The notes below the pieces were generated by a model. It did no database searches. It was given only the letters and a program-made list of their open reading frames with translations, and was not told where the DNA came from. 25,228 bases of DNA, from contig NIVC01005136.1 of NCBI GenBank assembly GCA_002269645.1, positions 1 through 25,228 of the forward strand, in the 5' to 3' direction. Positions 1 to 24,848 of this stretch are shown here, in pieces. Within the stretch, counting starts at the first letter, position 1, and every line of letters starts with the position of its first letter. Position numbers and translations under genes: made by a program. The DNA is from Macrostomum lignano. Its lineage: Eukaryota.

Positions 1-690
1 TACACGGTCAGTTAGGCGGAACTTAGGATTAGGAAGGATAAATAAAGCTTTGTAAGAGTTCAGACATGAAAGTATTTACACCTGAAAAAACGCGAAATAA
101 ATAAAATTAAACAAAGCACCCGGCATCCATGCACTACCGATTTGCAGTACATTTTTTACATGAATACAATTACATCTTAAAATCAAGTGGCAGCAGAAAT
201 GCGTTCAGAAAGAGGCTTTATTCTCGGCATACGTTGAGCAATATGAGAATAACAAACTTCAACTAACAAATAAGAGATAGTACTAAAAGTTCAGAAAACA
301 TGAAAATCACTAACTAAACCAATTCACTAGCATTCAAAGGTTAAAATGTTACGCCTATGGTAGGGAACTTGTAGTAGAAGTTTAGGCCCATAACAGGGGA
401 TTGTTGATCAAGACTGAGGACCATGAAAGGGGACTATTGGTCTAGCCTGAGGACTATAAAGTGGACTCAAGGACTACTCAAGTAGGGCGGGAAACTTCGT
501 TTCTTAGAAAATTTTAGGAAGCAGGTTTTACGCGATAAAAACCACAACGGAGATAGGGAGTTTTAATTTTTTTCAGCATAAAAATTGTTATTGCTTTCGA
601 TATGAGGCAGACCCAATGTTTATCTTTGATCTGTTGTGCTTTTTCTTATAGCTTATATTGATATTCAACTGTGGACCAGCAGGTACATTT

Positions 691-2586
691 TCACACGCCA
701 GTATCAGACAAAGAGTTAACAAAATCGCAAACTAAACAGCGGCAGTCCGTCGCCTGGCAGCCGACTCGGAGGCGAGGCTGCCGGCCCTGTCCAGCAGGTT
801 GCCCGTGTTGGCGGCCGAAGTTACCGCCGCAGATCTGGCGCAATAGCCGGCCATTCCTGACCAGATAGTCGGCAAACAGCCTATAATCGGCATTATCGTT
901 GCCATAGGCAACCGGCCGGATAAGGCCAGCCGGACACGGAGAGCCGCTTAGCCGGCAGCAGTTGACGAGCCGAGCCGCTCCATTCGATTGGCTCCTCGGA
1001 CAGCAGGAGCTGCAGCCGTCGACTGTCCTTGGCCAAGGCGGTCAGGTGCATCGGCGAGCAGCGCATCGCCACGGCCAGCGAGCGGCCGTTGTCGGAGTCG
1101 CGGTGGCGCAGGCCCAGCAGGTGGTAGGCTCGGAGCCGCAGCCACTGCGGCCAATCAGTGGCGGCCAGTTGACGAGCGGGCTGCAGGCGGCGATGGCGGC
1201 GGCCGGCAGGACGCGCAGCACAGAGTGAGACCACAGGCCGGCGGTTAAGTCGGCCAGTAGCCGCAGCGCCGACCATTTCTGCAGCGGGTCCGGGTCGCTG
1301 GAGCCGTCAGCACCGCGCCAGATAGCAGCTCCGGTGCCAGGGTTGCCATAGCAACGGCTGGCCAGCAGGCCTGACCGGAGGCCACAACTAGCACGGGCCG
1401 GTTGGGCATGGATCTGAGAGCGCGGTTTCTGAGCAGCCGGCACAGCAGGATGGAGTTCTCAGCTGCCGAGTAGGAGAATACCTGCGAGGATTAGTGAGGT
1501 GCTCAGTTGATGCTCGATTCATACTACTGACTGTTTCATTTCCTCGATTTTTATACTACTGACTACTCATTCGATCCATACTACTGACTATTCCCTCGAT
1601 TTTTATACTACTGACTACTTATTCGATCCATACTACTGACTATTCCTTCAATTTTAATACTACTGACTACTCATTCGATCCATACTACTGACTATTCCCT
1701 CGATTTTTATACTACTGACTACTCATTCTATCCATACTACTGACTATTCCCTCGATTTTTATACTACTGACTACTCATTCGATCCATACTACTGACTATT
1801 CCCTCGATTTTTATACTACTGACTACTCATTCGATCCATACTACTGACTATTCCCTCGATTTTTATACTACTGACTACTTATTCGATCCATACTACTGAC
1901 TATTCCCTCGATTTTTATACTACTGACTACTCATTCGATCCATACTACTGACTATTCCCTCGATTTTTATACTACTGACTACTTATTTGATCCATACTAC
2001 TGACTATTCCCTCGATTTTTATACTACTGACTACTCATTCGATTCATACTACTGACTATTATCTCGATTTATACTGACTGGCTACTGAATAGACTCAGTA
2101 CTGAATATTATACTTAACCGATTGACAATGACTACTTAATTGACTCATACTACTAATCACCAGCAGACTCACCCGCTCATCCTTAGCCGAGTGACCGGGC
2201 GAGCCCAGACCCGGCCAGAGCGGCAGCAGCACCCGTTGGCCGGCCTCCTCCAGATAGCGGCCGAGAGTCTCAACCTCCGAGTAGCCGCGCCCAAACGGCG
2301 CCAACAGGAGGAACAGCGCGTGCTGAGACTGGTGCTTCTTAGCCGGCACCGGGCTGAGATAGTAGCGCAATTTGAACTGCACCCCGGTGTAAATAGCCCT
2401 GTGCAGCCAAGCGTCCGAGGTTACCAGGGTCTCGCTCAGCGGGCCCAGGTGCTGCAGGTATTCGCTGGCAGTTTTCACTGTTGCAGGGCCGCCAGTTCCA
2501 TTGGAATTGTTGGTCTCGGGTCCGGCAGTGCTGGCGAGCTGACGGCGCCAGCAACAGCGGCGCCACGAGAGGAGCCGACGCGGTAA
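691..2586 (-). CDS. Alpha/beta-hydrolase-fold protein (DUF1057-like by recollection), with a possible mitochondrial presequence. Exon 1 is 2586-2173; exon 2 starts at 1481 and ends at 691 or 893. Frameshifted as assembled, and has no ATG of its own.
   Basis: Acceptor cattcag|TTA at 2586, donor CGG|gtgagt at 2173 and acceptor cctcgcag|GTA at 1481 are all phase 0. The joined peptide shows hydrolase-fold features: FLLLAPFGRGY, RVLLPLWPGLG, VLVVASGQACWPAVAMA (nucleophile-elbow position), PAGRRHRRLQP, AYHLLGLR, VAYGNDN and GGNF. These are spread over three frames in exon 2, so the 3' end is uncertain. Confidence 0.6.
1518..2075. repeat. 52-bp minisatellite (25+27 dimer sharing atactactgact), about 11 copies, in the intron of the hydrolase gene
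   Basis: Unit atactactgactactcattcgatccatactactgactattccctcgattttt; tcgatcc recurs at 1571 and 1623. Confidence 0.95.
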
Positions 2587-2720
2587 CTGAATGATTGGGT
2601 TTTTCAGCGATTGGAGTACGTAATATGAACACTTATAGCAGGTATTCTTTAGTTATAGCATAACAGGTAATACATGGACCTAAAAATACTCATGGAACTA
2701 AGGACGCATATTGCCTAACG

Positions 2721-3760
2721 ACAGCCTGATGGACCTAAAAACGGGCTGATGGACCTAACAACGGGCTGATGGACCTAACAACAGGCTGATGGACCTAACA
2801 ACGGGCTGATGGACCTAACTACAGGCTGATGGACCTAACAACGGGCTGATGGACCAAACGACAGGCTGATGGACCTAACAACGGGCTGATGGACCTAACA
2901 ACGGGCTGATGGACCTAACAACGGGCTGATGGACCTAAAAACGGGCTGATGGACCTAACAACGGGCTGATGGACCTAACAACGGGCTGATGGACCTAAAA
3001 ACGGGCTGATGGACCTAACAATGGGCTGATGGACCTAACGACAGGCTGATGGACCAAGCGACAGGCTGATGGACCAAGCGACAGGCTGATGGACCAAGCG
3101 ACAGGCTGATGGACCAAGCGACAGGCTGATGGACCAAGCGACAGGCTGATGGACCAAGCGACAGGCTGATGGACCAAGCGACAGGCTGATGGACCAAGCG
3201 ACAGGCTGATGGACCTAACGACAGGCTGATGGACCCAACGACAGGCTGATGGACCTAACGACAGGCTGATGGACCCAACGACAGGCTGATGGACCTAACG
3301 ACAGGCTGATGGACCAAACGACAGGCTGATGGACCAAGCGACAGGCTGATGGACCAAGCGACAGGCTGATGGACCAAACGACAGGCTGATGGACCTAACG
3401 ACAGGCTGATGGACCTAACTACAGGCTGATGGACCCAACGACAGGCTGATGGACCAAGCGACAGGCTGATGGACCAAGCGACAGGCTGATGGACCAAGCG
3501 ACAGGCTGATGGACCAAGCGACAGGCTGATGGACCTAACGACAGGCTGATGGACCCAACGACAGGCTGATGGACCTAACGACAGGCTGATGGACCAAACG
3601 ACAGGCTGATGGACCAAGCGACAGGCTGATGGACCTAACTACAGGCTGATGGACCAAACGACAGGCTGATGGACCTAACGACAGGCTGATGGACCTAACG
3701 ACAGGCTGATGGACCCAACGACAGGCTGATGGACCCAACGACAGGCTGATGGAACTAAAG
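2721..3760. repeat. 20-bp minisatellite acaggctgatggacc(t/a/c)a(a/g)cg, 52 copies in exact register
   Basis: Directly visible 20-bp periodicity. It explains the repetitive minus-strand ORFs at 2995-3738. Confidence 0.97.
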
Positions 3761-4324
3761 AGGAGGCGATGGAAATTATGAAGGGCCGATGGACCTAAAC
3801 ACTAACTTGCTGAAATACCTTTAAAACTAAGCTAAATAAAAAGGAATAAAAACACGAATATTCCCTTGTCAATGGCGGTGTGTATTTTACAATCATTATG
3901 CTATCTTTACCAGCCACAACACATCCAAACACACGATTTTATAGTTGAGGTACACAAACAGAAAAAAATATTACAGAATAAATGAACAAAATAATTAGAA
4001 CAATCTACAGTTTCTCTTCACATTGTTTCAGAAGCTTACTACGAGTAAAATCGGGGAAAATCCAGGCGATTATCTGGTTATAAAACTGACTGAGCCGATG
4101 CTGAATAACTGAACTTTACAGAGCGCGCATGTAGAAACGCACTCCAAGAAATCAGCGGTGAATCTGCTTGTTCGATTGATGCATTATTGATTAAAATAGA
4201 AGCGCTCGAGCCGGTTAATACTTTTTAGTATTAATAAAGTTATAAAGTATTAATATGTTTGTACTGGAGTTCGACTGCCGGCTACGGGCCACGGCAGCTT
4301 GTGGGGATGGACTAAACTGAAATT

Positions 4325-4408
<84 letters not shown>
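4325..4408. repeat. (GACA)n microsatellite
   Basis: Direct observation. Confidence 0.97.
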
Positions 4409-5010
4409 GTGGCACGCCGAGCAAGCCGGATGCCAAAACAAAGTCTCCAATTAACAAAACCGGTAAAAATGAAGGCAATAAAAAGCAGATACACAGGCAA
4501 AACAGCATATTTGGCCGAACTAAACCACAAAGCGTGGTACAGACTCAGGCAAAGTGATTTGATGCACAGAAAAAAAACAAATTAAGTTTGGCAAGGGCCT
4601 GTATGAAAGAGACTGAAGAAATTAAAGCTACATACATACATATTCGTAAGCCTCACTGTACACGTCTGGGAGTGAACGAACAAGATTAACATCAAAGTAT
4701 GGGCTGCTGAACTTTAGTTTAATTAATAACAGCCTAGTCATAATTAGTTACCATAATAATAGAACTGAAGCCTGTACAGTACATGCATTATGACAGTTGA
4801 AATTGTTTGATTAATAGGCAGTATGACTCTGGTGAGATCGGGGTTCCCTTGTTGACCCAGAGAGTAGGCCATGTCAATGAAATAGGTATGGCTCATACGG
4901 TTCTCTGAATCTCGTACTAAGTCGAGTCACACAGATAATAAAGACCGCCAAAGGACAATAGCAGAGCTACCGCGAAGGTCAAGGCAGGTCACGTCAGGAA
5001 TCGTCCAACA

Positions 5011-5401
5011 CAGACTACTCTGGGGGGGGTCACGCCAGGTCAGGGCAGCACAGGCTTTACTCTCGGGTCACGCCAGGTCAGGGCAGCACAGGCTTTACTC
5101 TCGGGGTCACGCCAGGTCAGGGCAGCACAGGCTCTACTCTCGGGGTCACGCCAGGTCAGGGCAGCACAGGCTCTACTCTGGGGGGTCACGCCAGGTCAGG
5201 GCAGCACAGGCTCTACTCTGGGGGGTCACGCCAGGTCAGGGCAGCACAGGCTCTACTCTCGGGGTCACGCCAGGTCAGGGCAGCACAGGCTCTACTCTCG
5301 GGGTTACGCCAGGTCAGGGCAGCACAGACTCTACTCTCGGGGTCACGCCAGGTCAGGGCAGCACAGGCTCTACTCTCGGGGGTCACGCCAGGTCAGGGCA
5401 G
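5011..5401. repeat. About 39-bp minisatellite (variable G-run), about 10 copies, overlapping the PLEKHM2-like stop codon
   Basis: Unit gggtcacgccaggtcagggcagcacaggctctactctc(g/t). The last copy includes bases 5393-5401, which read CTG CCC TGA on the minus strand. Confidence 0.95.
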
Positions 5402-8400: not shown

Positions 8401-9272
8401 GACTCGAGTAGAGACTCGCTGAGAGCCCGGAACAGCCAGGCGCGAGCTCTGCCGTGATTGGTTAGGAGGTACCTGGGCAAAGATAAGGGATTGAACGGGT
8501 ACACTGCTGAGGCATGAGCCTGACTGTGCATACGTGCAAACTGAGGAATATAAGCGTAGAATGGATATTATAAGCTGTGAGGTGTGTACATTGTGTGTGT
8601 ACATTGAGGGGTAGAGAGGTGTGGGCGAGGGCGGAAAATTGTGTGTACATTGAGGGGTAGAGAAGTGTGGGCGAGGGCGGAAGATTGTGTGTACATTGAG
8701 GGGTAGAGAGGTGTGGGCGAGGGAGGAAAATTGTGTGTACATTGAGGGGTAGAGAGGTGTGGGCCAGGGCGGAAAATTGTGTGTACATTGAGGGGTAGAG
8801 AGGTGTGGGCCAGGGCGGAAAATTGTGTGTACATTGAGGGGTAGAGAGGTGTGGGCCAGGGCGGAAAATTGTGTGTACATTGAGGGGTAGAGAGGTGTGG
8901 GTGAGGGCGGAAAATTGTGTGTACATTGAGGGGTAGAGAGGTGTGGGTGAGGGCGGAAAATTGTGTGTACATTGAGTGGTAGAGAGGTGTGGCCTCAATG
9001 CAGGAGAATATTGGAAGGCAAAGGGCTTTAAGCTAGAGTTACCTGCTGGCTTTAATCTCCCGAATAACATCTTTATGGCTGAGCTCCACAAGCAGGTCCC
9101 AGTAGCCGCGCGACGGTGTCCTTAGGCCGTCAAGAAATACTCGATCTAGACAGTGACAGACTTTTTGCACGCAGGGATTGTCGCTGGTTAGAGCGATGCT
9201 CTCGGTGCAGATGCACTGGATCTCTTTGAGGGCGACGCTAAGCCGCTGCAAATGAGCGTCCTTGATGGACAT
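5393..9272 (-). CDS. PLEKHM2: PLEKHM2/SKIP-like RUN- and PH-domain lysosome adaptor. Exons 9272-9043, 8472-7085 (1-nt deletion at 7388/7389), 6696-6045 and 5659-5393; about 845 aa if the frame is restored.
   Basis: RUN domain MSIKDAHLQRLSVALKEIQ..CHCLDRVFLDGL..GYWDLLVEL..GRARAWLFRALSESLLESYL..LLRKFYEPHALL resembles PLEKHM2 VKDRILENISLSVKKLQ..GYWVLV..GRSRAWLYLALNENSLESYL. The C-terminal exon LDEIRSIG..YLTLRL..TWLICLGSAEERNRL resembles the PLEKHM2 C-terminus. GT-AG phases (2,2,0) are consistent; exon total 2537+1=2538 nt. Confidence 0.85.
5681..5972. repeat. 33-bp minisatellite (36-bp variants), 9 copies, in PLEKHM2-like intron 3 (6044-5660)
   Basis: Unit cagctcaactacagctatagaatgctcagattg. Confidence 0.95.
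6791..6976. repeat. 32-bp minisatellite, about 6 copies, in PLEKHM2-like intron 2 (7084-6697)
   Basis: Unit ccaggccctcaaccctccggaatcccccgctg; caaccctcc recurs at 6791 and 6823. Confidence 0.95.
7358..7495 (-). repeat. Coding hexamer repeat (GATGCG/GATGCT on the minus strand) encoding an Asp-Ala tract in PLEKHM2-like exon 2
   Basis: Plus strand reads (gcatcc)n; translation DADADA. Confidence 0.9.
8593..8991. repeat. 46-bp G-rich minisatellite, about 9 copies, in PLEKHM2-like intron 1 (9042-8473)
   Basis: Unit ttgtgtgtacattgaggggtagagaggtgtgggcgagggcggaaaa; period 46 (8601 to 8647). Confidence 0.95.
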
Positions 9273-11175: not shown

Positions 11176-12901
11176 TCAGAACAGGATTCCAGCAGTTGAA
11201 CAGCACTGCAGCTGGGCAGCCGCATCTCTGCCATAGCTGATGGGCTCCACCACTGACAGACCCGGGTCTGAGATCGTCCGCGAGTAGGCCGGGGCAGTCG
11301 CCGATCTCAGCTGGAACAGCGGCGCCGAGGTCTCAGGTTCGAGCTCCATCTCGCCGCCGATCTCATTACAGTTGGCCGCTATTGCTGAGTCTTCAACGAA
11401 CCCTTTCGCTGGCTCGTGTGCCGAGAACAGGCGGATGCTCTGCAGCAGGGCGGAAACCTCCGACTCAAAGTTTGCGCTGGCCTGGAAGGGCGGGTGAGGG
11501 AGAGAGTGAATAGTTTGAATTCGCGCCAACGTGCTGAATCCGAATTCTAATAATCATTTCTAAGATTAACAAGATTCATCTCATGGATTACCAATAATCC
11601 AACAGGATTACCAATAATCCAACAGAATTACCAATAATCCAACAGGATTACCAATGATCCAACAGATTACCAATAATCCAACAGATTACCAATGATCCAA
11701 CAGAATTACCAATAATCCAACAGAATTACCAATGATCCAACAGATTACCAATGATCCAACAGAATTACCAATGATCCAACAGGATTACCAATAATCCAAC
11801 AGGATTACCAATGATCCAACAGGATTACCAATATCAACAGATTACCAATGATCCAACAACAGGATTACCAATGATCCAACAGGATTACCAATGATCCAAC
11901 AGGATTACCAATGATCCAACAGGATTACCAATGATCCAACAGGATTACCAATGATCCAACAGGATTACCAATGATCCAACAGGATTACCAATGATCCAAC
12001 AGGATTACCAATGATCCAACAGGATTACCAATGGATTACCAACCAGGATTACCAATATCCAACAGGATTACCAATAATCCAACAGGATTACCAATAATCC
12101 AACAGGATTACCAATAATCCAACAGGATTACCAATATCCATCCAACCAACAGGATTACCAATGATCCAACAGGATTACCAACAGGATTAACAATAATCCA
12201 ACAGGATAATCCAACAGGATTACCAATAATCCAACAGGATTACCAATAATCCAACAGGATTACCAATAATCCAACAGGATTACCAATGATCCAACAGCAT
12301 TACCAATGATCCAACAGGATCACCAATAATCCAACAGGATTACCAATAATCCAACAGGATTAACAATAATCCAACAGGACCAACAATAATCCAAGGACTA
12401 CTAAAACTAATTATACACTTGGATTCTCACGTGAACTCCGCCGGAAGCTGATGAGGCGGCGGCCGCTGGGCTGTCGCTGGCATCTGACAGCAGCTCGGCG
12501 AACCAGGCGGGCGCAGACGCGCTGTCCTCCTTCCACTTGGCTTCAGCGTAGGCGCTGGCTACCTCATAGATGAGCTGGAAGCTGGAGAAACTCGAGATGC
12601 TGTAGTTGTGCACAGGCGGGGTCAGGTACCAGCACCAGGTCGCCTCCTGCAGGTTGTGCTGCCGGACATTCATGCTGGAGGTGATGCTGGCAAGGCGGAG
12701 CTGAACGTCGATGAGGCTCGGATAGCGGGTGCCGCCGCGGGCTAGGAAGGCCCGGAAGCCGGACAGGCTGTCGCCGTAGACCCGGTAGCCGCCCTGCTCC
12801 AGGCTGCTGCTCTCAGAGATGTCCACGGCGACTACTTTGGCTGCGCCGAACTGGTACCTGGCAGTGTGTTGGAGCGGGAAACTGGCGACTGTTTTGTGGA
12901 T

Positions 12902-12944
<43 letters not shown>

Positions 12945-12989
12945 CACACACACACACACAGACACACACACACACAGACAGACAGACAG

Positions 12990-13050
<61 letters not shown>

Positions 13051-13181
13051 AAGACAGACAGACACACAAAAAGACAGACAGACAGACATCCACACACACA
13101 GACAGAGAGACAGATAGGCAGACAGACAGACAGACAGACAGACAAAAAGACAGACAGACAGACAGAAACACACACACACAC

Positions 13182-13226
<45 letters not shown>

Positions 13227-13293
13227 TAGACAGACAGACAGACACTTAGACAAACACTAAGACAGACAGACAGACAGACAGACACACAGACAC

Positions 13294-13359
<66 letters not shown>

Positions 13360-16300
13360 TGAGCACATCAGCGGGCAGATTATTAACGAAGCAGCCGTCA
13401 ACCAGCAGGTCGCCGTCATCGCTCCAGATGGGCGGCAGTATGATGGGGTAGGACATGCTAGCCCTGACGGCTTTCCACAGGCGGCCGCGCGTCATAACTC
13501 GCATCCGGCAGCTCTGCAAATCTGTGGCCACAAAATAGCAGGGCAGCCAGAGATCCTCGATGTTCAAGTCGCGATCGAACAGCTTCAGCACCAGCCGGTT
13601 CATAAGGCCGCCGCGGAAAAACGACACCAGCGGCAGCGTCATGTCCAGCAGTTGCATCAGCAGGGAGCCGGCCTCGCTGAATGTCTTCTTGGAGCTGTAC
13701 ATGAGCGACTCCAGGCTGGTGTCCATCGCCCACAGGCTGGCCATCAGCGAGCCGATGCTGGTACCGCTCAAGGCATCGATGGGCACCCGTCGATCGCACA
13801 GCAGCTTGATGACGGCCGGGTGCGCTGCGCCCCTGGCCCCGCCGCCGCCAAGCGCCAACCCGATCGAGGCGCCGGTTAGTCGGCGCGCCAATCGGCGCAT
13901 ATCCGGCGCCACGCGCAACGAGACCCGTCGAGTCCGGTGCAAGCGCAGGCTGTCGGGCAACCGCAGGTGCAGATGCTGCCGGACCCACGGCCGGGCGGCC
14001 AGAAACGGCGCCGTAGAGCCGGGCGGCACCCGGGCTCGCCGCTTCGGATGCAGCAGCAGCAGCTCGATCTGCGCCCTGCTGTACCTGGTGCAGAAGTGCT
14101 CGGTGAGGCAGGGCGCTGGCGGCCCGTCGTGATCTGACAACACCAGGATGATGTCCGCCTGCCTGATGCACAGCAGAGTCCACGGCGTCAGCTCGTAGTC
14201 TGCGGCGAATATAACAAAATTATTCTCCTCCTCCCCGGCCGTTAGCCAGCTGTGCAATGCGTCATCCCTGGTGCCCAGGTCCCACACGGACTTGTGGAAT
14301 TTGCGGCAGACCAGCTCCGAGGACAGGTGGCGCACCGGTGGCGGCAGAAGGCCAGCCAAGCAGCCGGCAAAAGAGGCGGCCGGCAGGTAGCCCTGAGCCG
14401 GGATCACTGCCACAGTCTTCACAGGAGACGACTGCGGCCGGCTGCAGCTGCTGGATGCCTGGCTGGAGTAAGAATCCAGCAAGGCGTTGGCCAGAGTGGA
14501 CACCAGCAGGTGGGAGAAGCCCTGGAATCGCTGGGACAGGAAGGAGACCAGGTGTCTGCTTAATCGGATCAGCTCGGAGTCGCGCACAGACTCGGCCGGT
14601 AGCGGGCACTGAGACCGGTTCAGCGCCGCTACTAAGTTAATAATCCTCCCCCGGCCGTAGTACTCGGACTGTCCGGACAGTAGCAGTCGGCCGGACAGCA
14701 GGAAATGGCAGTGCGGATCGTCCACGCCAGTCCGGCTGGCCAGGCTGGCGCCGCATTTCAACGATACGAAGCGCAGCGCGTAGTCCAGAGTGCGCACCAG
14801 CGGGCTGATGGAGCCAAGGCAGCTGTCTGACACCCGGGCAAGGCAGGCCGCCAGCAGCCGCGGCTCCGAGGCCAGGCTGGCCGGGTCCAGACGGGCCAGG
14901 ACGGCCGCGGATCGGCAGTAGATGTCCGAGGCCAGCGGCAGCTGACCGCAGTAGCTGACCATGCCGAAGAATTCGCCTGGGCCGGCCACCTGGATGATTG
15001 TTAGTCAGTTAGTTAATTAAATTATGCTATCATCCAGGTAGTAATCTCTAATCAGAGATCCCATCATCCAGGTATTTTAAACTCTAATCAGAGATTACAT
15101 CTACCAGGTATTGATCCTTAATCAAAGATCCCATAATCCAGGTATTAATCCCTAACCAGAGATCCCATAATTCAGGTATTGATCCTTAATCAGAAATCCC
15201 ATAATCCAGGTATTAATCCATAATCAGAGATCCCATAATCCAGGTATTAATCCATAATCAGAGATCCCATAATCCAGGTATTAATCCCTAACCAGAGATC
15301 CCATAATCCAGGTATTAATCCCTAACCAGAGATCCCATAATCCAGGTATTAATCCCTAACCAGAGATCCCATCATCCAGGTATTAATCCCTAACCAGAGA
15401 TCCCATCATCCAGGTATTAATCCTAACCAGAGATCCCATCATCCAGGTATTAATCCTTAATCAGAGATCCCATAATCCAGGTATTAATCCATAATCAGAG
15501 ATCCCATCATTTAGGTATTGATCCTTAATCAGAAATCCCGACTGTGAATTCGTGAAGCGACCCCCCCCCCAAGAAGTGCTCACCGATATGGGCTTGGCTC
15601 CCACCCGCTGCCACAGCCGGCCCCGCAGCACAAAGTACAGGCAGGTCAGGCGATCGCCCGCCTTGGCCACAGCATCGCCCGGCTTGCACTCGGTCACGGA
15701 CACGGCGGCTTTGAATCGATCCTCTGGCAGCTCCAGGATGCGAGCCAGCTGTGGCAGCCGGGCCTCCACCGCGTCCGATCGTTGGGAGCCCCACAGACCG
15801 CAGGCGGTGGTCGTGGCGACTCCCGTCTGCTGCTGCTCCCCGCTAGCATTGGTCTCGTCCGGCACCAAGACCGGCAGCAGGCCCTGAACAAAGACTTTGC
15901 TGAACTGACGCCAGCAATAAGTAGACACGGGATTAACGGGCGGACTAAATGATGAAGAACTCAAGTTCAAGGCTTGGCACAGAGCTCGGAAAGACAGAAA
16001 GCGGATGCTAGTAGGCTGCAGGCCGGGATAAGCGCGCAGGTAGACTCGGGCATCCGGGTGCTGCGAGTCCCGGACACTTGGCCGAGACTGGCACAGATGG
16101 CCCAGCAGCATCAGAGGGCTGAATATGCACTCCCCGGGCGGCACCACCTCAACTATGGTGTGCCTGCCGAATAGGCGGATCTCAATAGCGCCGGAGTCCA
16201 CAAGCACAATGCCATTGGCTGGCTCCGCCTCCACCAGGGTGCCGGCTGGCCAGCGGCTGCCAACCAGAGCCAGCCGGTCAATCTCGGCCGCCTGGAGCGA

Positions 16301-18740: not shown

Positions 18741-21700
18741 TCAGCGAACGCTAGCCAAGCGATTTGCCAAGTCGGGCTCAGACGGGAAAGGCGAGCTGGC
18801 AGCGTAGGCGATGCAGTAGTGCTCCAGCAGCTGGTCGAATCCTTCTCGTTCGTCCAGCATCTCGATGCGCTCCACCCTAGCCGTGGCCGGCTGCGGCAGG
18901 GCCGCATAAACTCGGCGCATCGTCCAGACAGCGGCCGCGGGCCAGCCGGCGCGGAGCAGGCGCTGACGCTGGGCGTCTTCGCTGGCGCAGGCGGCCGAGC
19001 CGGCGAGGTCGCAGCCGCGAGAGCGAAAATTTGATAGCATCACCTCGCCGAAACGGTCGCTGAGATTAACCTGGCGAATTAGGGATTTAACAAAAACTTT
19101 CTATATTTATATAAGTGGAAAATATTGCATTTGCCGATCAAGCCAAATACTCGTAGTTAAAACGGCCCTTTTAGGGCACAGTTAACTCGTAAAAAGTAGC
19201 CAATCGCGAGTAGATTATGCATGAGAATTCTAGACATAATATCCTCTTGACCCACCAAACCAGAAAGGTTACTTGACTCTCTCTTCAGACGCTATTGGAC
19301 ATAACTTTCGATACATATCGGCTGACTGAGAAATCGTTACTTTCGATACATATCGGCTGACTGAGAAATAGTCACTTTCGATACATATCGGCTGACTTAC
19401 ATTGTAGAAATAGTTACTTTTGAATACACATCGCTGACTGAGAAATAGTCACTTTCAATACATATCGGCTGATTGAGAAAGAGTTACTTTTGATACATAT
19501 TGGCTGACTGAGAAATAGTTACTTTCGATACATATCGGCTGACTGTGAAATAGTTACTTTCGATACATATCGGCTGACTGAGAAATAGTTACATGTACTT
19601 TCAATACGCATCAGTTAACCAAAAAATACTTTAGATACATAACGGCTGTTCTTCTCACCTGTTCATAATGCAGCAAAGCGGATTTAGTAAACTGATTAGC
19701 TAATTGAGCCAACAGTTTCTCGCTAGACTCGACAGGCAGGTAAACCAGAACGCATTCGGCTAAGAAAATGGTAGGCAAGTCTGCATCAAGTCCGCAGCTA
19801 CTCCGCAGAGTAGACACCACAGCTGCTGGATCGCGCAGATCAGCGGGCACAATGTGATACGGATCAGCGTGCAGCTCATGCCGATTGTGCACAATGTCAA
19901 CCTCATCGCCACCGATAGCTTCCAATAATTGCCGATTAGAGGTCACCTGTAGAACTTTGCGGCTAGTGTTGTCTTGCAGGTCGGCGTCAACCCATTTGCA
20001 TGGCAACCAGTCGGCCTGGGGCCAGCTAGTGCACAAGCACATGTAGGTTGTGTCAGACCCGGCACCCAGGTTCACTACCTGTTGTGTGTGACGTAATGGT
20101 AGAATTTGAATGGAGTTAATACGACAAGGACCGGTCAATAGAAACGGAAAGTTGGATTTTGACTCTAAAGTGACTGGAGTTCACATTGACTAGAGTTCAC
20201 ATTGGCTAGAGTTCACAGTGACTGGAGTTCACAGTGACTGGATTTCACAGTGACTGGAGTTCACAGTGACTGGAGTTCACATTGGCTAGAGTTCACAGTG
20301 ACTGGATTTCACAGTGACTGGAGTTGACAGTGACTAGAGTTCACAGTGACTGGAGTTCACAGTGACTGGATTTCACAGTGACTGGATTTCACAGTGACTA
20401 GAGTTCACAGTGACTGGATTGACAGTGACTGGAGTTCACAGTGACTGGAGTTCACAGTGACTGGAGTTCACAGTGACTGGATTGACAGTGACTGGAGTTC
20501 ACAGTGACTGGAGTTCACAGTGACTGGAGTTCACAGTGACTGGATTTCACAGTGACTGGATTTCACAGTGACTGGAGTTCACAGTGACTGGATTGACAGT
20601 GACTGGAGTTCACAGTGACTGGAGTTCACAGTGACTGGAGTTCACAGTGACTGGAGTTCACAGTGACTGGATTGACAGTGACTGGAGTTCACAGTGACTG
20701 GAGTTCACAGTGACTGGAGTTCACAGTGACTGGAGTTCACAGTGACTGGAGTTCACAGTGACTGGATTTCACAGTGACTGGATTGACAGTGACTGGAGTT
20801 CACAGTGACTGGAGTTCACAGTGACTGGAGTTCACAGTGACTGGATTGACAGTGACTGGAGTTCACAGTGACTGGAGTTCACAGTGACTGGAGTTCACAG
20901 TGACTGGAGTTCACAGTGACTGGATTTCACAGTGACTGGATTGACAGTGACTGGAGTTCACAGTGACTGGAGTTCACAGTGACTGGAGTTCACAGTGACT
21001 GGATTTCACAGTGACTGGATTTCACAGTGACTGGAGTTCACAGTGACTGGATTGACAGTGACTGGAGTTCACAGTGACTGGAGTTCACAGTGACTGGAGT
21101 TCACAGTGACTGGATTTCACAGTGACTGGAGTTCACAGTGACTATAGTTCATAGTGACTGGAGTTCACAGTGACTGGAGTTCACAGTGACTGGATTTCAC
21201 AGTGACTGGAGTTCACAGTGACTGGAGTTCACAGTGACTGGATTTCACAGTGACTGGATTTCACAGTGACTGGAGTTCACAGTGACTGGAGTTCACAGTG
21301 ACTGGAGTTCACAGTGACTGGATTGACAGTGACTGGAGTTCACAGTGACTGGAGTTCACAGTGACTGGAGTTCACAGTGACTGGATTTCACAGTGACTGG
21401 ATTTCACAGTGACTATAGTTCATAGTGACTGGATTGACAGTGACTGGATTTCACAGTGACTGGAGTTGACAGTGACTAGAGTTCACAGTGACTGGATTGA
21501 CAGTGACTGGAGTTCACAGTGACTGGAGTTCACAGTGACTGGAGTTCACAGTGACTGGAGTTCACAGTGACTGGATTGACAGTGACTGGAGTTCACAGTG
21601 ACTGGAGTTCACAGTGACTGGAGTTCACAGTGACTGGATTTCACAGTGACTGGAGTTCACAGTGACTGGAGTTCACAGTGACTGGAGTTCACAGTGACTA

Positions 21701-24334: not shown

Positions 24335-24408
24335 GCAGACAGACAGACAGACAGACGGACAGACAGACAGACAGACTTGCAGACAGACAGACAGACAGAA
24401 AGACTTGC

Positions 24409-24459
<51 letters not shown>

Positions 24460-24468
24460 AAGACTTGC

Positions 24469-24535
<67 letters not shown>

Positions 24536-24549
24536 ACAGAAAGACTTGC

Positions 24550-24581
<32 letters not shown>

Positions 24582-24617
24582 TTGCAGACAGACAGACAGA
24601 CAGACAGAAAGACTTGC

Positions 24618-24652
<35 letters not shown>

Positions 24653-24661
24653 AAGACTTGC

Positions 24662-24717
<56 letters not shown>

Positions 24718-24773
24718 GGACAGACAGACGGACAGACAGACAGACAGACTTGCAGACAGACAGACAGACTTGC

Positions 24774-24804
<31 letters not shown>

Positions 24805-24848
24805 AAGACTTGCAGACAGACAGACAGACAGACAGACTTGCAACTTGC
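24335..24848. repeat. (GACA)n microsatellite with recurring CTTGCA / AAAGACTTGCA interruptions
   Basis: Direct observation; it explains the QTDR/SVCL ORFs. Confidence 0.97.

What the first reader, a model, noticed from the sequence alone, without database searches (positions are those of the whole stretch)
2173..2655. ATG-less first exon starting with a mitochondrial-presequence-like peptide: candidate start codon donated by a spliced leader
Exon 2586-2173 has no Met in 138 codons. Upstream in the same frame there is a TAA at 2655-2653 with no ATG in between. The nearby out-of-frame ATGs (2661, 2675, 2693) have no phase-0 donor. The exon opens at a phase-0 acceptor with LPRRLLSWRRCCWRRQLAST, an Arg-rich, acid-free sequence typical of mitochondrial presequences, which must be N-terminal. 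Flatworm spliced leaders end in a conserved AUG that can serve as the initiator. Trans-splicing here would give MLPRRLLSWRR..., so targeting would depend on trans-splicing.
Basis: partly seen in the sequence, partly recalled or inferred. Interest (0 to 1): 0.7.

Follow-up and report, generated by a model that had tools for sequence, protein, structure and literature searches.

The report
Start codon supplied by flatworm spliced leader
This Macrostomum lignano gene has no start codon of its own and most likely gets its AUG from the trans-spliced leader, which is a known flatworm mechanism, so this is a tidy example and not a new kind of thing.

Summary
Exon 2586-2173 (minus strand) is a 138-codon open frame without Met. 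It begins directly after an AG acceptor and is closed upstream by an in-frame TAA at 2655-2653.

The window is Macrostomum lignano, gene Mlig005851.g1. Its three GenBank copies are all flagged 'partial', and their CDSs begin 0, 3 and 6 nt after this same acceptor.

The M. lignano spliced leader is 35 nt long and ends in ATG. Joined at 2586, it gives one uninterrupted 388-codon ORF starting MLPRRLLSWRR. Without it, the first in-frame AUG is codon 164, inside the hydrolase-like core.

The published annotation pipeline trims the leader and cuts transcripts at leader-read peaks. That explains the 'partial' models. I could reach no leader-containing read or transcript, so the junction is inferred and not shown.

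The N-terminus looks like a mitochondrial presequence by composition: six Arg and no acidic residue in the first 24 residues, and an R-3 motif RQL|AS. Its amphipathicity is not above shuffles, and no targeting predictor or homologue supports it.

Initiation at the leader's AUG has been known in flatworms since 2006, and Macrostomum annotators have remarked on it. This is a new member of a known kind, of low to moderate interest.

The parts
2587..2592 (-). Predicted spliced-leader (trans-splice) acceptor ATTCAG, with the AG at 2588-2587. The exon starts at 2586.
   Evidence: Sequence read. The published M. lignano trans-splice acceptor motif is [T/C]TNCAG (PMC8629364). This copy matches 5 of 6 positions, and copies g2 and g3 read CTTCAG, 6 of 6. 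The GenBank CDS of g3 starts exactly here.
2173..2586 (-). Coding exon 1 of Mlig005851.g1: 138 codons, no Met, phase 0 at both ends.
   Evidence: Identical to L003 from Mlig_3_7. G+C is 64.5% against 35% in the flanks.
2518..2586 (-). Presequence-like N-terminus LPRRLLSWRRCCWRRQLASTAGP (residues 2-24 once the leader's Met is added). It has six Arg and no acidic residue. The R-3 motif RQL|AS predicts cleavage after Leu18.
   Evidence: composition, motif scan, and hydrophobic moment (not above shuffles).
2653..2655 (-). In-frame TAA that closes the frame 22 codons above the acceptor. It is conserved in all three copies.
2167..2172 (-). 5' splice donor GTGAGT of intron 1.
   Evidence: It matches the published M. 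lignano donor motif GT[G/A]AG.
1482..2172 (-). Intron 1 (691 nt), mostly a 52-bp tandem array at 1538-2086.
732..1481 (-). Coding exon 2 (250 codons including the TAG at 734-732). In this window four one-base indels break it into three frames: a base missing near 1302/1301 and near 1149/1148, and an extra base at 908 and at 855.
   Evidence: The Mlig_3_7 copies are intact and translate to PAA72940.1, PAA55104.1 and PAA53740.1.
2714..3798 (.). A 20-bp tandem array (54 copies) filling the presumed outron just upstream of the acceptor.

Best explanation
The exon is the first coding exon of Macrostomum lignano gene Mlig005851. This gene encodes a Macrostomum-restricted protein of 388 residues with a weak alpha/beta-hydrolase-fold signature.

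Proposed mechanism:
1. The pre-mRNA is trans-spliced at the AG at 2588-2587.
2. The 35-nt spliced leader CGGTCTCTTACTGCGAAGACTCAATTTATTGCATG is joined directly to TTA at 2586.
3. The leader's 3'-terminal AUG becomes codon 1 of the ORF, giving MLPRRLLSWRR...
4. Without the leader the mRNA has no usable initiator, so making the full-length protein depends on trans-splicing.
5. The exposed Arg-rich, acid-free N-terminus then probably acts as a mitochondrial presequence, cleaved after Leu18.

Shown: the organism, the ATG-less exon, the phase and the intact ORF, the acceptor motif, and the positions of the annotated 5' ends.

Inferred: the leader-exon junction itself (about 0.8), initiation at the leader's AUG, and mitochondrial import (about 0.5).
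For: Organism and gene:
- The query hits BOX15_Mlig005851g2 at 97% identity. Cluster members g1 and g3 match too, and all three are labelled 'partial'.
- Window 600-2800 equals locus L003 (g1) with no substitutions.

Leader:
- The M. lignano leader ends in ATG, and 30-39% of its genes are trans-spliced (PMC8629364; PMC5730564).
- Leader plus exons gives a 388-codon ORF. The next in-frame AUG is codon 164, and two out-of-frame AUGs come before it.

Annotated 5' ends:
- The GenBank CDSs start at +0 (g3), +3 (g2) and +6 (g1) from the acceptor.
- A transcript reaching 69 nt or more upstream would contain the in-frame TAA and could not yield a 5'-open ORF. The transcript models therefore end at the acceptor.
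- The pipeline trims the leader, cuts transcripts at leader-read peaks and calls ORFs with TransDecoder.
- A neighbouring DNAAF11-like gene shows the same behaviour. Its CDS starts 1 nt after tttcag.

Sequence features:
- The acceptor fits the trans-splice motif.
- Composition steps sharply at the acceptor.
- Between copies the CDS differs by 0.9% (5 synonymous and 5 non-synonymous changes), against roughly 4-10% in the flanks.

Independent older models:
- Four gene models from an older assembly all start 14-15 nt above the acceptor.
- A leader-bearing transcript would stop aligning at about that point, because the outron end resembles the 3' part of the leader.

Precedent:
[quoted passage not shown] 2006, as summarised in PMC9851317).
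- Macrostomum annotators note that the leader's final ATG is a start codon (PMC10468722).

Presequence: composition and the R-3 motif.
Against: - No leader-containing read or transcript was seen. The Met-prefixed proteins are not in the 15-billion-protein collection, and the gene is not named in any supplement I could search.
- The three GenBank starts differ by 3 and 6 nt, and I cannot explain why.
- The initiation context of the leader's AUG is poor (TGCaugT).
- The window copy has A instead of a pyrimidine at position -6 of the acceptor motif.
- The three copies are recent duplicates, so their agreement says little about constraint.
- For the presequence, the hydrophobic moment is ordinary (47% of shuffles reach it), no predictor was available, and no homologue of known location exists.
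Confidence: 0.78

Rival explanations
1. An unannotated upstream exon, cis-spliced to 2586, supplies an ordinary genomic ATG. The acceptor would then be a normal intron end and not a trans-splice site.
For: Between the upstream gene's stop codon (5395-5393) and 2587, one ATG-to-donor candidate has a consensus GT[AG]AG donor in phase 0. It lies at 4692-4657 and reads ATG TTA ATC TTG TTC GTT CAC TCC CAG ACG TGT ACA|GTGAGG, 12 codons. In flatworms, trans- and cis-splicing often share acceptors (PMC12582326).
Against: About one such candidate is expected by chance (35 ATG-to-GT pairs x 1/32). It is AT-rich, unlike every coding exon here. None of the three genome-guided transcript models includes it, and the models stop at the acceptor.
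Confidence: 0.08
2. The full-length ORF is not translated. The locus would be a decaying or non-coding copy, or it makes only a truncated product from the first internal AUG (codon 164).
For: There is no genomic start codon. The protein matches Pfam only weakly (Abhydrolase_1, 14 bits against a cut-off of 25.8). The expected nucleophile Ser aligns to Gly. The window copy itself is frameshifted.
Against: The window's frameshifts are one-base homopolymer indels against an otherwise identical assembly (0 substitutions in 2.2 kb). All three Mlig_3_7 copies keep 387 open codons. The CDS diverges far less than its flanks. A relative at 51% identity in another sample keeps the C-terminal half, including VASGQACW. 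Starting at codon 164 would delete the part of the alpha/beta-hydrolase match that lies N-terminal to the nucleophile-elbow position.
Confidence: 0.07
3. The leader does supply the AUG, but the Arg-rich N-terminus is not a mitochondrial presequence. It could be, for example, a nucleolar or RNA-binding basic patch, or merely a GC-rich disordered leader.
For: The helical hydrophobic moment of residues 2-19 is 0.33, and 4698 of 10000 shuffles reach it. Exons here are 65-70% G+C, which favours Arg codons. No relative of known location exists. The structure model is uninformative (pLDDT 34.5).
Against: The first 24 residues hold six Arg, no Lys and no acidic residue. They are followed by an R-3 cleavage motif (RQL|AS) and a polar linker, and there is no hydrophobic core of the signal-peptide type. 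The copy difference C12F keeps a hydrophobic residue in W-R-R-[C/F]-C.
Confidence: 0.4
4. An mRNA that is not trans-spliced initiates at a near-cognate codon.
For: In-frame GTG (codon 38) and CTG (codons 45, 48, 51, 55) exist.
Against: None lies near the N-terminus, and none has a notable context. This would not explain why three transcript models end at an AG acceptor.
Confidence: 0.03

Closest known systems
ORFs initiated at the flatworm spliced leader's 3'-terminal AUG (Cheng, Cohen, Ndegwa and Davis 2006, J Biol Chem 281:733; called 'slORFs' in PMC9851317)
   Same: The leader ends in AUG and the acceptor is in phase, so the leader's AUG becomes codon 1. The recipient exon has no initiator of its own. 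The genome annotation therefore shows an ATG-less or 'partial' CDS.
   Different: It is documented in Schistosoma mansoni. For Macrostomum I found only a remark that the leader's final ATG is a start codon (PMC10468722), and no gene-level description. Here the junction is inferred from annotation boundaries and was not sequenced.
Echinococcus granulosus thioredoxin glutathione reductase, whose alternative trans-spliced mRNAs encode mitochondrial and cytosolic variants (Agorio et al. 2003, J Biol Chem 278:12920; title seen in the reference list of PMC12582326)
   Same: In a flatworm, the choice of trans-splicing decides whether a mitochondrial N-terminus is present.
   Different: That case has two alternative products of a conserved enzyme, with localisation shown (from the title and my recollection; I did not read the paper here). 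Here only one acceptor is indicated, the protein is lineage-restricted, and localisation is untested.
Trypanosoma brucei isoleucyl-tRNA synthetase, dually targeted through alternative trans-splicing (PMC3273800, listed)
   Same: The trans-splice site determines whether a presequence is encoded.
   Different: The trypanosome leader supplies no AUG. The site merely includes or excludes a genomic AUG.
Alpha/beta-hydrolase fold proteins (Pfam Abhydrolase_1 / Hydrolase_4; nearest solved chain 3qit_A)
   Same: There is weak sequence similarity across the segment around the strand-nucleophile-helix position. UniProt labels truncated models of this gene 'Hydrolase_4 domain-containing'.
   Different: The score is below Pfam's cut-off. 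The nucleophile elbow reads A-S-G-Q-A instead of G-x-S-x-G. No relatives outside Macrostomum-like samples were found among 1.8 billion representatives.

Membership tests
ORF initiated at the flatworm spliced leader's AUG | The organism performs SL trans-splicing with a leader that ends in AUG. | tested here: met
   Identified as M. lignano. Its 35-nt leader ends in ATG (PMC8629364).
ORF initiated at the flatworm spliced leader's AUG | The leader's AUG is in frame with the ORF, with no stop codon between them. | tested here: met
   Leader plus exon 1 plus exon 2 gives 388 codons from the leader's AUG.
ORF initiated at the flatworm spliced leader's AUG | The mature mRNA has no genomic initiator able to give the full protein. 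| tested here: met
   There is no ATG between the TAA at 2655-2653 and codon 164, and the earlier ATGs are out of frame. Only one chance-level upstream exon candidate exists.
ORF initiated at the flatworm spliced leader's AUG | The leader-exon junction is observed in transcripts. | not testable with these tools
   The evidence is only indirect: 5'-partial GenBank CDSs begin at +0, +3 and +6 from the acceptor, and the pipeline logic explains this. No reads or transcripts could be reached.
ORF initiated at the flatworm spliced leader's AUG | Translation starts at the leader's AUG. | not testable with these tools
   This needs ribosome profiling, N-terminal proteomics or a reporter.
M. lignano trans-splice acceptor | The motif [T/C]TNCAG lies at the outron-exon junction. 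| tested here: met
   The window and g1 read ATTCAG (5 of 6). Copies g2 and g3 read CTTCAG (6 of 6). The motif is short and is also close to the cis acceptor CAG, so it does not discriminate well.
Mitochondrial matrix presequence (cleaved by the mitochondrial processing peptidase, MPP) | An N-terminal stretch rich in Arg and free of acidic residues. | tested here: met
   Six Arg and no Asp or Glu in residues 1-24. The first acidic residue is at position 25.
Mitochondrial matrix presequence (cleaved by the mitochondrial processing peptidase, MPP) | An amphipathic helix. | tested here: inconclusive
   The hydrophobic moment is 0.58 over residues 2-15 but 0.33 over residues 2-19, and 47% of shuffles reach the latter.
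Mitochondrial matrix presequence (cleaved by the mitochondrial processing peptidase, MPP) | An R-2 or R-3 cleavage motif. | tested here: met
   R16-Q-L|A-S, with cleavage predicted after residue 18. This is a motif-level match only.
Mitochondrial matrix presequence (cleaved by the mitochondrial processing peptidase, MPP) | Import shown experimentally, or predicted by a trained predictor. | not testable with these tools
   TargetP and MitoFates are not available here, and no experiment was possible.
Alpha/beta-hydrolase fold (Pfam Abhydrolase_1) | A profile match above the curated cut-off. | tested here: not met
   13.8-14.1 bits against a cut-off of 25.8, E about 0.04.
Alpha/beta-hydrolase fold (Pfam Abhydrolase_1) | A nucleophile elbow G-x-S-x-G. 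| tested here: not met
   VVASGQAC aligns to LVGHSMGA of 3qit_A, placing Gly at the Ser position. The alignment is weak (E = 0.026).
Alpha/beta-hydrolase fold (Pfam Abhydrolase_1) | The fold itself. | tested here: inconclusive
   The single-sequence AlphaFold2 model has a mean pLDDT of 34.5 and is unusable.
Downstream gene of an M. lignano operon (Ustyantsev and Berezikov 2021) | Same strand, repeat-adjusted intergenic distance under 1 kb, and the downstream gene trans-spliced. | tested here: inconclusive
   The genes are on the same strand. From the upstream stop codon (5393) to the acceptor is 2806 nt, or 1252 nt after removing the tandem arrays. The upstream 3' UTR length is unknown, so the gene-to-gene distance may fall under 1 kb.

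The most novel reading that the evidence does not exclude
Trans-splicing acts here as an obligatory switch. Without the leader there is neither an ORF nor a presequence. The protein it gates would be a Macrostomum-restricted alpha/beta-hydrolase-like protein that has probably lost its nucleophile and would be imported into mitochondria. The gene may be the downstream cistron of a repeat-padded polycistron that also holds the RUN-domain gene. This would be a clean, genetically tractable case, in a transgenic flatworm, of organelle targeting that is encoded only after RNA processing.
Probability: 0.35. Interest if true: 0.4.

Novelty: new member of a known kind. Interest (0 to 1): 0.25.

Why it matters
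**Annotation.** Pipelines that trim the spliced leader, including its ATG, leave many M. lignano proteins labelled 'partial', with their real N-termini and any targeting signals missing. In this one neighbourhood, three gene models begin ATG-less at AG acceptors. Adding the leader's ATG back wherever it is in frame would complete such models and change predictions of subcellular location.

**Biology.** This locus adds a free-living, transgenesis-ready flatworm example to a mechanism documented mainly in parasitic flatworms. It could serve as a simple reporter for leader-dependent translation. It does not open a new question.

Tried and rejected
- **Transcript evidence through the protein collections.** A search with the N-terminal 183 residues, Met included, found only two frameshifted UniProt models. 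Exact look-ups of the Met-prefixed and leader-extended proteins for g1 and g2/g3 found nothing.
- **The gene id in papers and supplements.** 'Mlig005851' gave no hit.
- **Distant homologues, to learn function or location.** A full HMMER scan of 1.84 billion representatives gave only M. lignano copies plus one partial relative at 51% identity. That relative sits on a 1-kb Logan contig (SRR31628394) that does not reach the N-terminus.
- **Structure.** Single-sequence AlphaFold2 gave a pLDDT of 34.5, so I did not run a fold search.
- **Leader sequence or leader gene inside the window.** None was found at up to 3 mismatches.
- **Pseudogene reading based on the window's three-frame exon 2.** Rejected. 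The breaks are four one-base homopolymer indels against an otherwise identical Mlig_3_7 locus, and the ORF is intact in three copies.
- **Conservation among g1, g2 and g3 as a test of the acceptor.** This has little power, because the copies differ at only 2 of 134 bases upstream.

Full report
**What is in the sequence**

On the minus strand, an AG at 2588-2587 is followed by TTA CCG CGT CGG at 2586. The frame stays open for 138 codons to CGG at 2175-2173, and a GTGAGT donor follows. The exon contains no Met.

Upstream, the same frame is closed by TAA at 2655-2653 with no ATG in between. The ATG at 2661 is in frame, but it reads ATG CTA TAA.

G+C rises from 35% to 70% exactly at the acceptor, and GC3 peaks in this frame. 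Coding therefore begins at the first base of the exon.

**Organism and gene**

A protein search hit 'hypothetical protein BOX15_Mlig005851g2, partial [Macrostomum lignano]' at 97% identity. Its 90% cluster also holds g1 and g3 (PAA72940.1 and PAA53740.1), which are likewise 'partial'.

I fetched the three loci from assembly GCA_002269645.1. Window 600-2800 matches the g1 locus (L003) with no substitutions and eight one-base homopolymer indels. All eight lie downstream of position 1400.

The window is therefore another assembly of the g1 locus, and its 5' region is identical. Four of the indels fall in exon 2, near 1302, 1149, 908 and 855. They explain why the window's exon 2 reads in three frames. 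In Mlig_3_7 all three copies have an intact 387-codon ORF with a GTGAGT donor and a CCTCGCAG acceptor.

**The spliced leader**

M. lignano has one 35-nt leader, CGGTCTCTTACTGCGAAGACTCAATTTATTGCATG. It is found on 30-39% of genes. The top motif at trans-splice acceptors is [T/C]TNCAG (PMC8629364; PMC5730564).

The window reads ATTCAG| and copies g2 and g3 read CTTCAG|. Joining the leader to 2586 gives ATG TTA CCG..., a 388-codon ORF. The next ATGs in the mature mRNA are out of frame, with ORFs of 8 and 33 codons. The first in-frame one is codon 164, just before the nucleophile-elbow position of the hydrolase-like core.

**Why the annotation points to trans-splicing**

The Mlig_3_7 pipeline extracted leader-containing reads, trimmed the leader, mapped the remainder and 'cut' transcripts at the resulting peaks. 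ORFs were then called with TransDecoder. A gene that depends on the leader's ATG must come out of that pipeline as a 5'-partial CDS starting at the acceptor.

That is what is seen:
- g3 starts exactly at cag|TTACCG, g2 starts 3 nt in, and g1 starts 6 nt in.
- Any transcript model reaching 69 nt further upstream would contain the in-frame TAA and could not be called 5'-open. The models therefore end at the acceptor.
- Two neighbouring genes behave alike. The DNAAF11-like CDS starts 1 nt after tttcag|, with its own ATG seven codons in. The RUN-domain gene's CDS starts at the CAG of ...gatgcCAG|CAAAAT.

I cannot explain the 3-nt and 6-nt offsets in g2 and g1.

There is an independent hint. Four UniProt models from the older assembly all begin 14-15 nt above the acceptor (NPIIQLPRR... 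and TQSFSY...). A leader-bearing transcript aligned locally to the genome runs 17 nt past the acceptor under three scoring schemes, because AAAACCCAATCATTCAG resembles the leader's AAGACTCAATTTATTGCATG. This fits evidence transcripts that carried the leader. It is still an inference about how those models were built.

**What I could not get**

I could not see the junction itself.
- The Met-prefixed proteins are absent from the protein collection.
- An N-terminal search found nothing new.
- The gene id appears in no paper or supplement I could search.

**Rivals**

- *An upstream cis-spliced ATG exon.* A scan of 2587-5400 found 35 ATG-to-phase-0-GT pairs. Only one has a GT[AG]AG donor (4692-4657, 12 AT-rich codons), and about one is expected by chance. 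No transcript model includes it.
- *A dead gene.* The three ORFs are intact, the CDS diverges by 0.9% against several percent in the flanks, and a relative at 51% identity in another sample keeps the C-terminal half.
- *Non-AUG initiation.* This would not explain 5' ends at an AG acceptor.

**The protein and the presequence**

Pfam gives only a sub-threshold Abhydrolase_1 match. The best solved relative, 3qit_A (E = 0.026), aligns its GHSMG to ASGQA, placing Gly where the nucleophile Ser should be. The same VASGQACW is present in the distant relative. A full HMMER scan found no family outside Macrostomum-like samples, and the structure model is unusable.

With the leader's Met, the N-terminus is MLPRRLLSWRRCCWRRQLASTAGPE.... 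It has six Arg and no acidic residue before position 25. There is an R-3 motif RQL|AS, no hydrophobic core of the signal-peptide type, and a polar linker follows.

The helical hydrophobic moment is not above shuffles. Arg-richness is also favoured by the 65-70% G+C of the exons. Mitochondrial targeting is plausible, at about 0.5, but untested.

**Comparison with what is known**

Initiation at the leader's AUG was established in Schistosoma mansoni. There the AUG is in frame in 28% of trans-spliced mRNAs, and more than 40 cDNAs need it (Cheng et al. 2006, as summarised in PMC9851317; also cited in PMC5832876, and PMC12582326).

Mitochondrial and cytosolic variants produced by alternative trans-splicing are reported for Echinococcus thioredoxin glutathione reductase (Agorio et al. 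2003, title seen) and for Trypanosoma brucei IleRS (PMC3273800). Macrostomum annotators note that the leader's final ATG is a translation start and that trimming it causes annotation problems (PMC10468722).

**Verdict**

The trans-splicing interpretation is well supported by indirect evidence (about 0.8), and the targeting claim is plausible but unproven. The mechanism is already known in flatworms, so this is a new member of a known kind, of low to moderate interest. Its main practical value is for correcting 'partial' N-termini in M. lignano annotation.

Noticed in passing
window 732-1481 (minus strand): near 1302/1301, near 1149/1148, 908 and 855; four more downstream of the TAG stop codon: Against the Mlig_3_7 locus the window has no substitutions but eight one-base homopolymer indels. 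Four of them frameshift exon 2, so the window's own translation of this gene is wrong after residue 200 or so. Other ORFs in the window may have the same problem.
   Followed up: yes
window about 1380-1360 (minus strand), protein motif VVASGQACW; L004 197-223: The position of the alpha/beta-hydrolase nucleophile Ser is occupied by Gly (A-S-G-Q-A against G-H-S-M-G in 3qit_A). The same motif is kept in a relative at 51% identity, so this may be a conserved pseudo-enzyme. The alignment is weak (E = 0.026).
   Followed up: partly
window 9326-9272 (minus strand); L001 2912; L003 2956: The GenBank CDS of the upstream RUN-domain gene (862-863 aa) is also ATG-less. It starts at the CAG of ...gatgcCAG|CAAAATTTGG. 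If trans-spliced after that AG, the leader's ATG would be in frame (MQNLVKQQ...), 17 codons ahead of the gene's own ATG at 9272.
   Followed up: partly
L001 18417, L002 14673, L003 18161 (outside the window): The DNAAF11-like neighbour's CDS starts 1 nt after tttcag| and is 5'-open. The leader's ATG would be out of frame there (ATG TGT GCT TAA), and the gene's own ATG lies seven codons in. This is a local control showing how trans-spliced genes look in this annotation.
   Followed up: partly
window 2603-2587 (minus strand): The last 17 nt of the outron (AAAACCCAATCATTCAG) resemble the 3' part of the leader (AAGACTCAATTTATTGCATG). About 5% of shuffles score as well. A leader-bearing cDNA would align 17 nt too far, and four UniProt models from the older assembly start at -15 or -14.
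   Followed up: partly
window 2648-2647, 2633-2632 and 2588-2587 (minus strand): All three AG dinucleotides between the in-frame TAA and the exon end a codon in frame 0. The leader's ATG would therefore be in frame at any of them. The two upstream ones are AAG and fit the acceptor motif poorly.
   Followed up: no
window 732-23000, minus strand: Four genes lie on the same strand: an LCMT-like gene (LCM domain at 19611-20138), an NTE/PNPLA6-like gene (cNMP-binding, NTE_Ploop and Patatin domains, 12.4-17 kb), a RUN-domain gene (5.4-9.3 kb) and the hydrolase-like gene. Their spacers are mostly tandem arrays. From the RUN gene's stop codon to the acceptor is 2806 nt, or 1252 nt without the arrays, which is close to the published 1-kb repeat-adjusted operon threshold.
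   Followed up: partly
window 12904-13359, 4325-4409 and 24336-24837: Long (GACA)n and (CAGA)n microsatellites read as open frames of the '...SVCLSVCL...' type. One joins two NTE exons into a spurious 860-aa ORF at 12407-14989. The list of mechanical ORFs overstates exon length here.
   Followed up: no
proteins P0002 and P0003 (UniProt A0A1I8FPM5 and A0A1I8FHQ1): Gene models of this locus family from the older assembly hop between frames. They carry unrelated names ('Exostosin domain-containing', 'Pecanex-like'), apparently from chimeric or frameshifted predictions.
   Followed up: no
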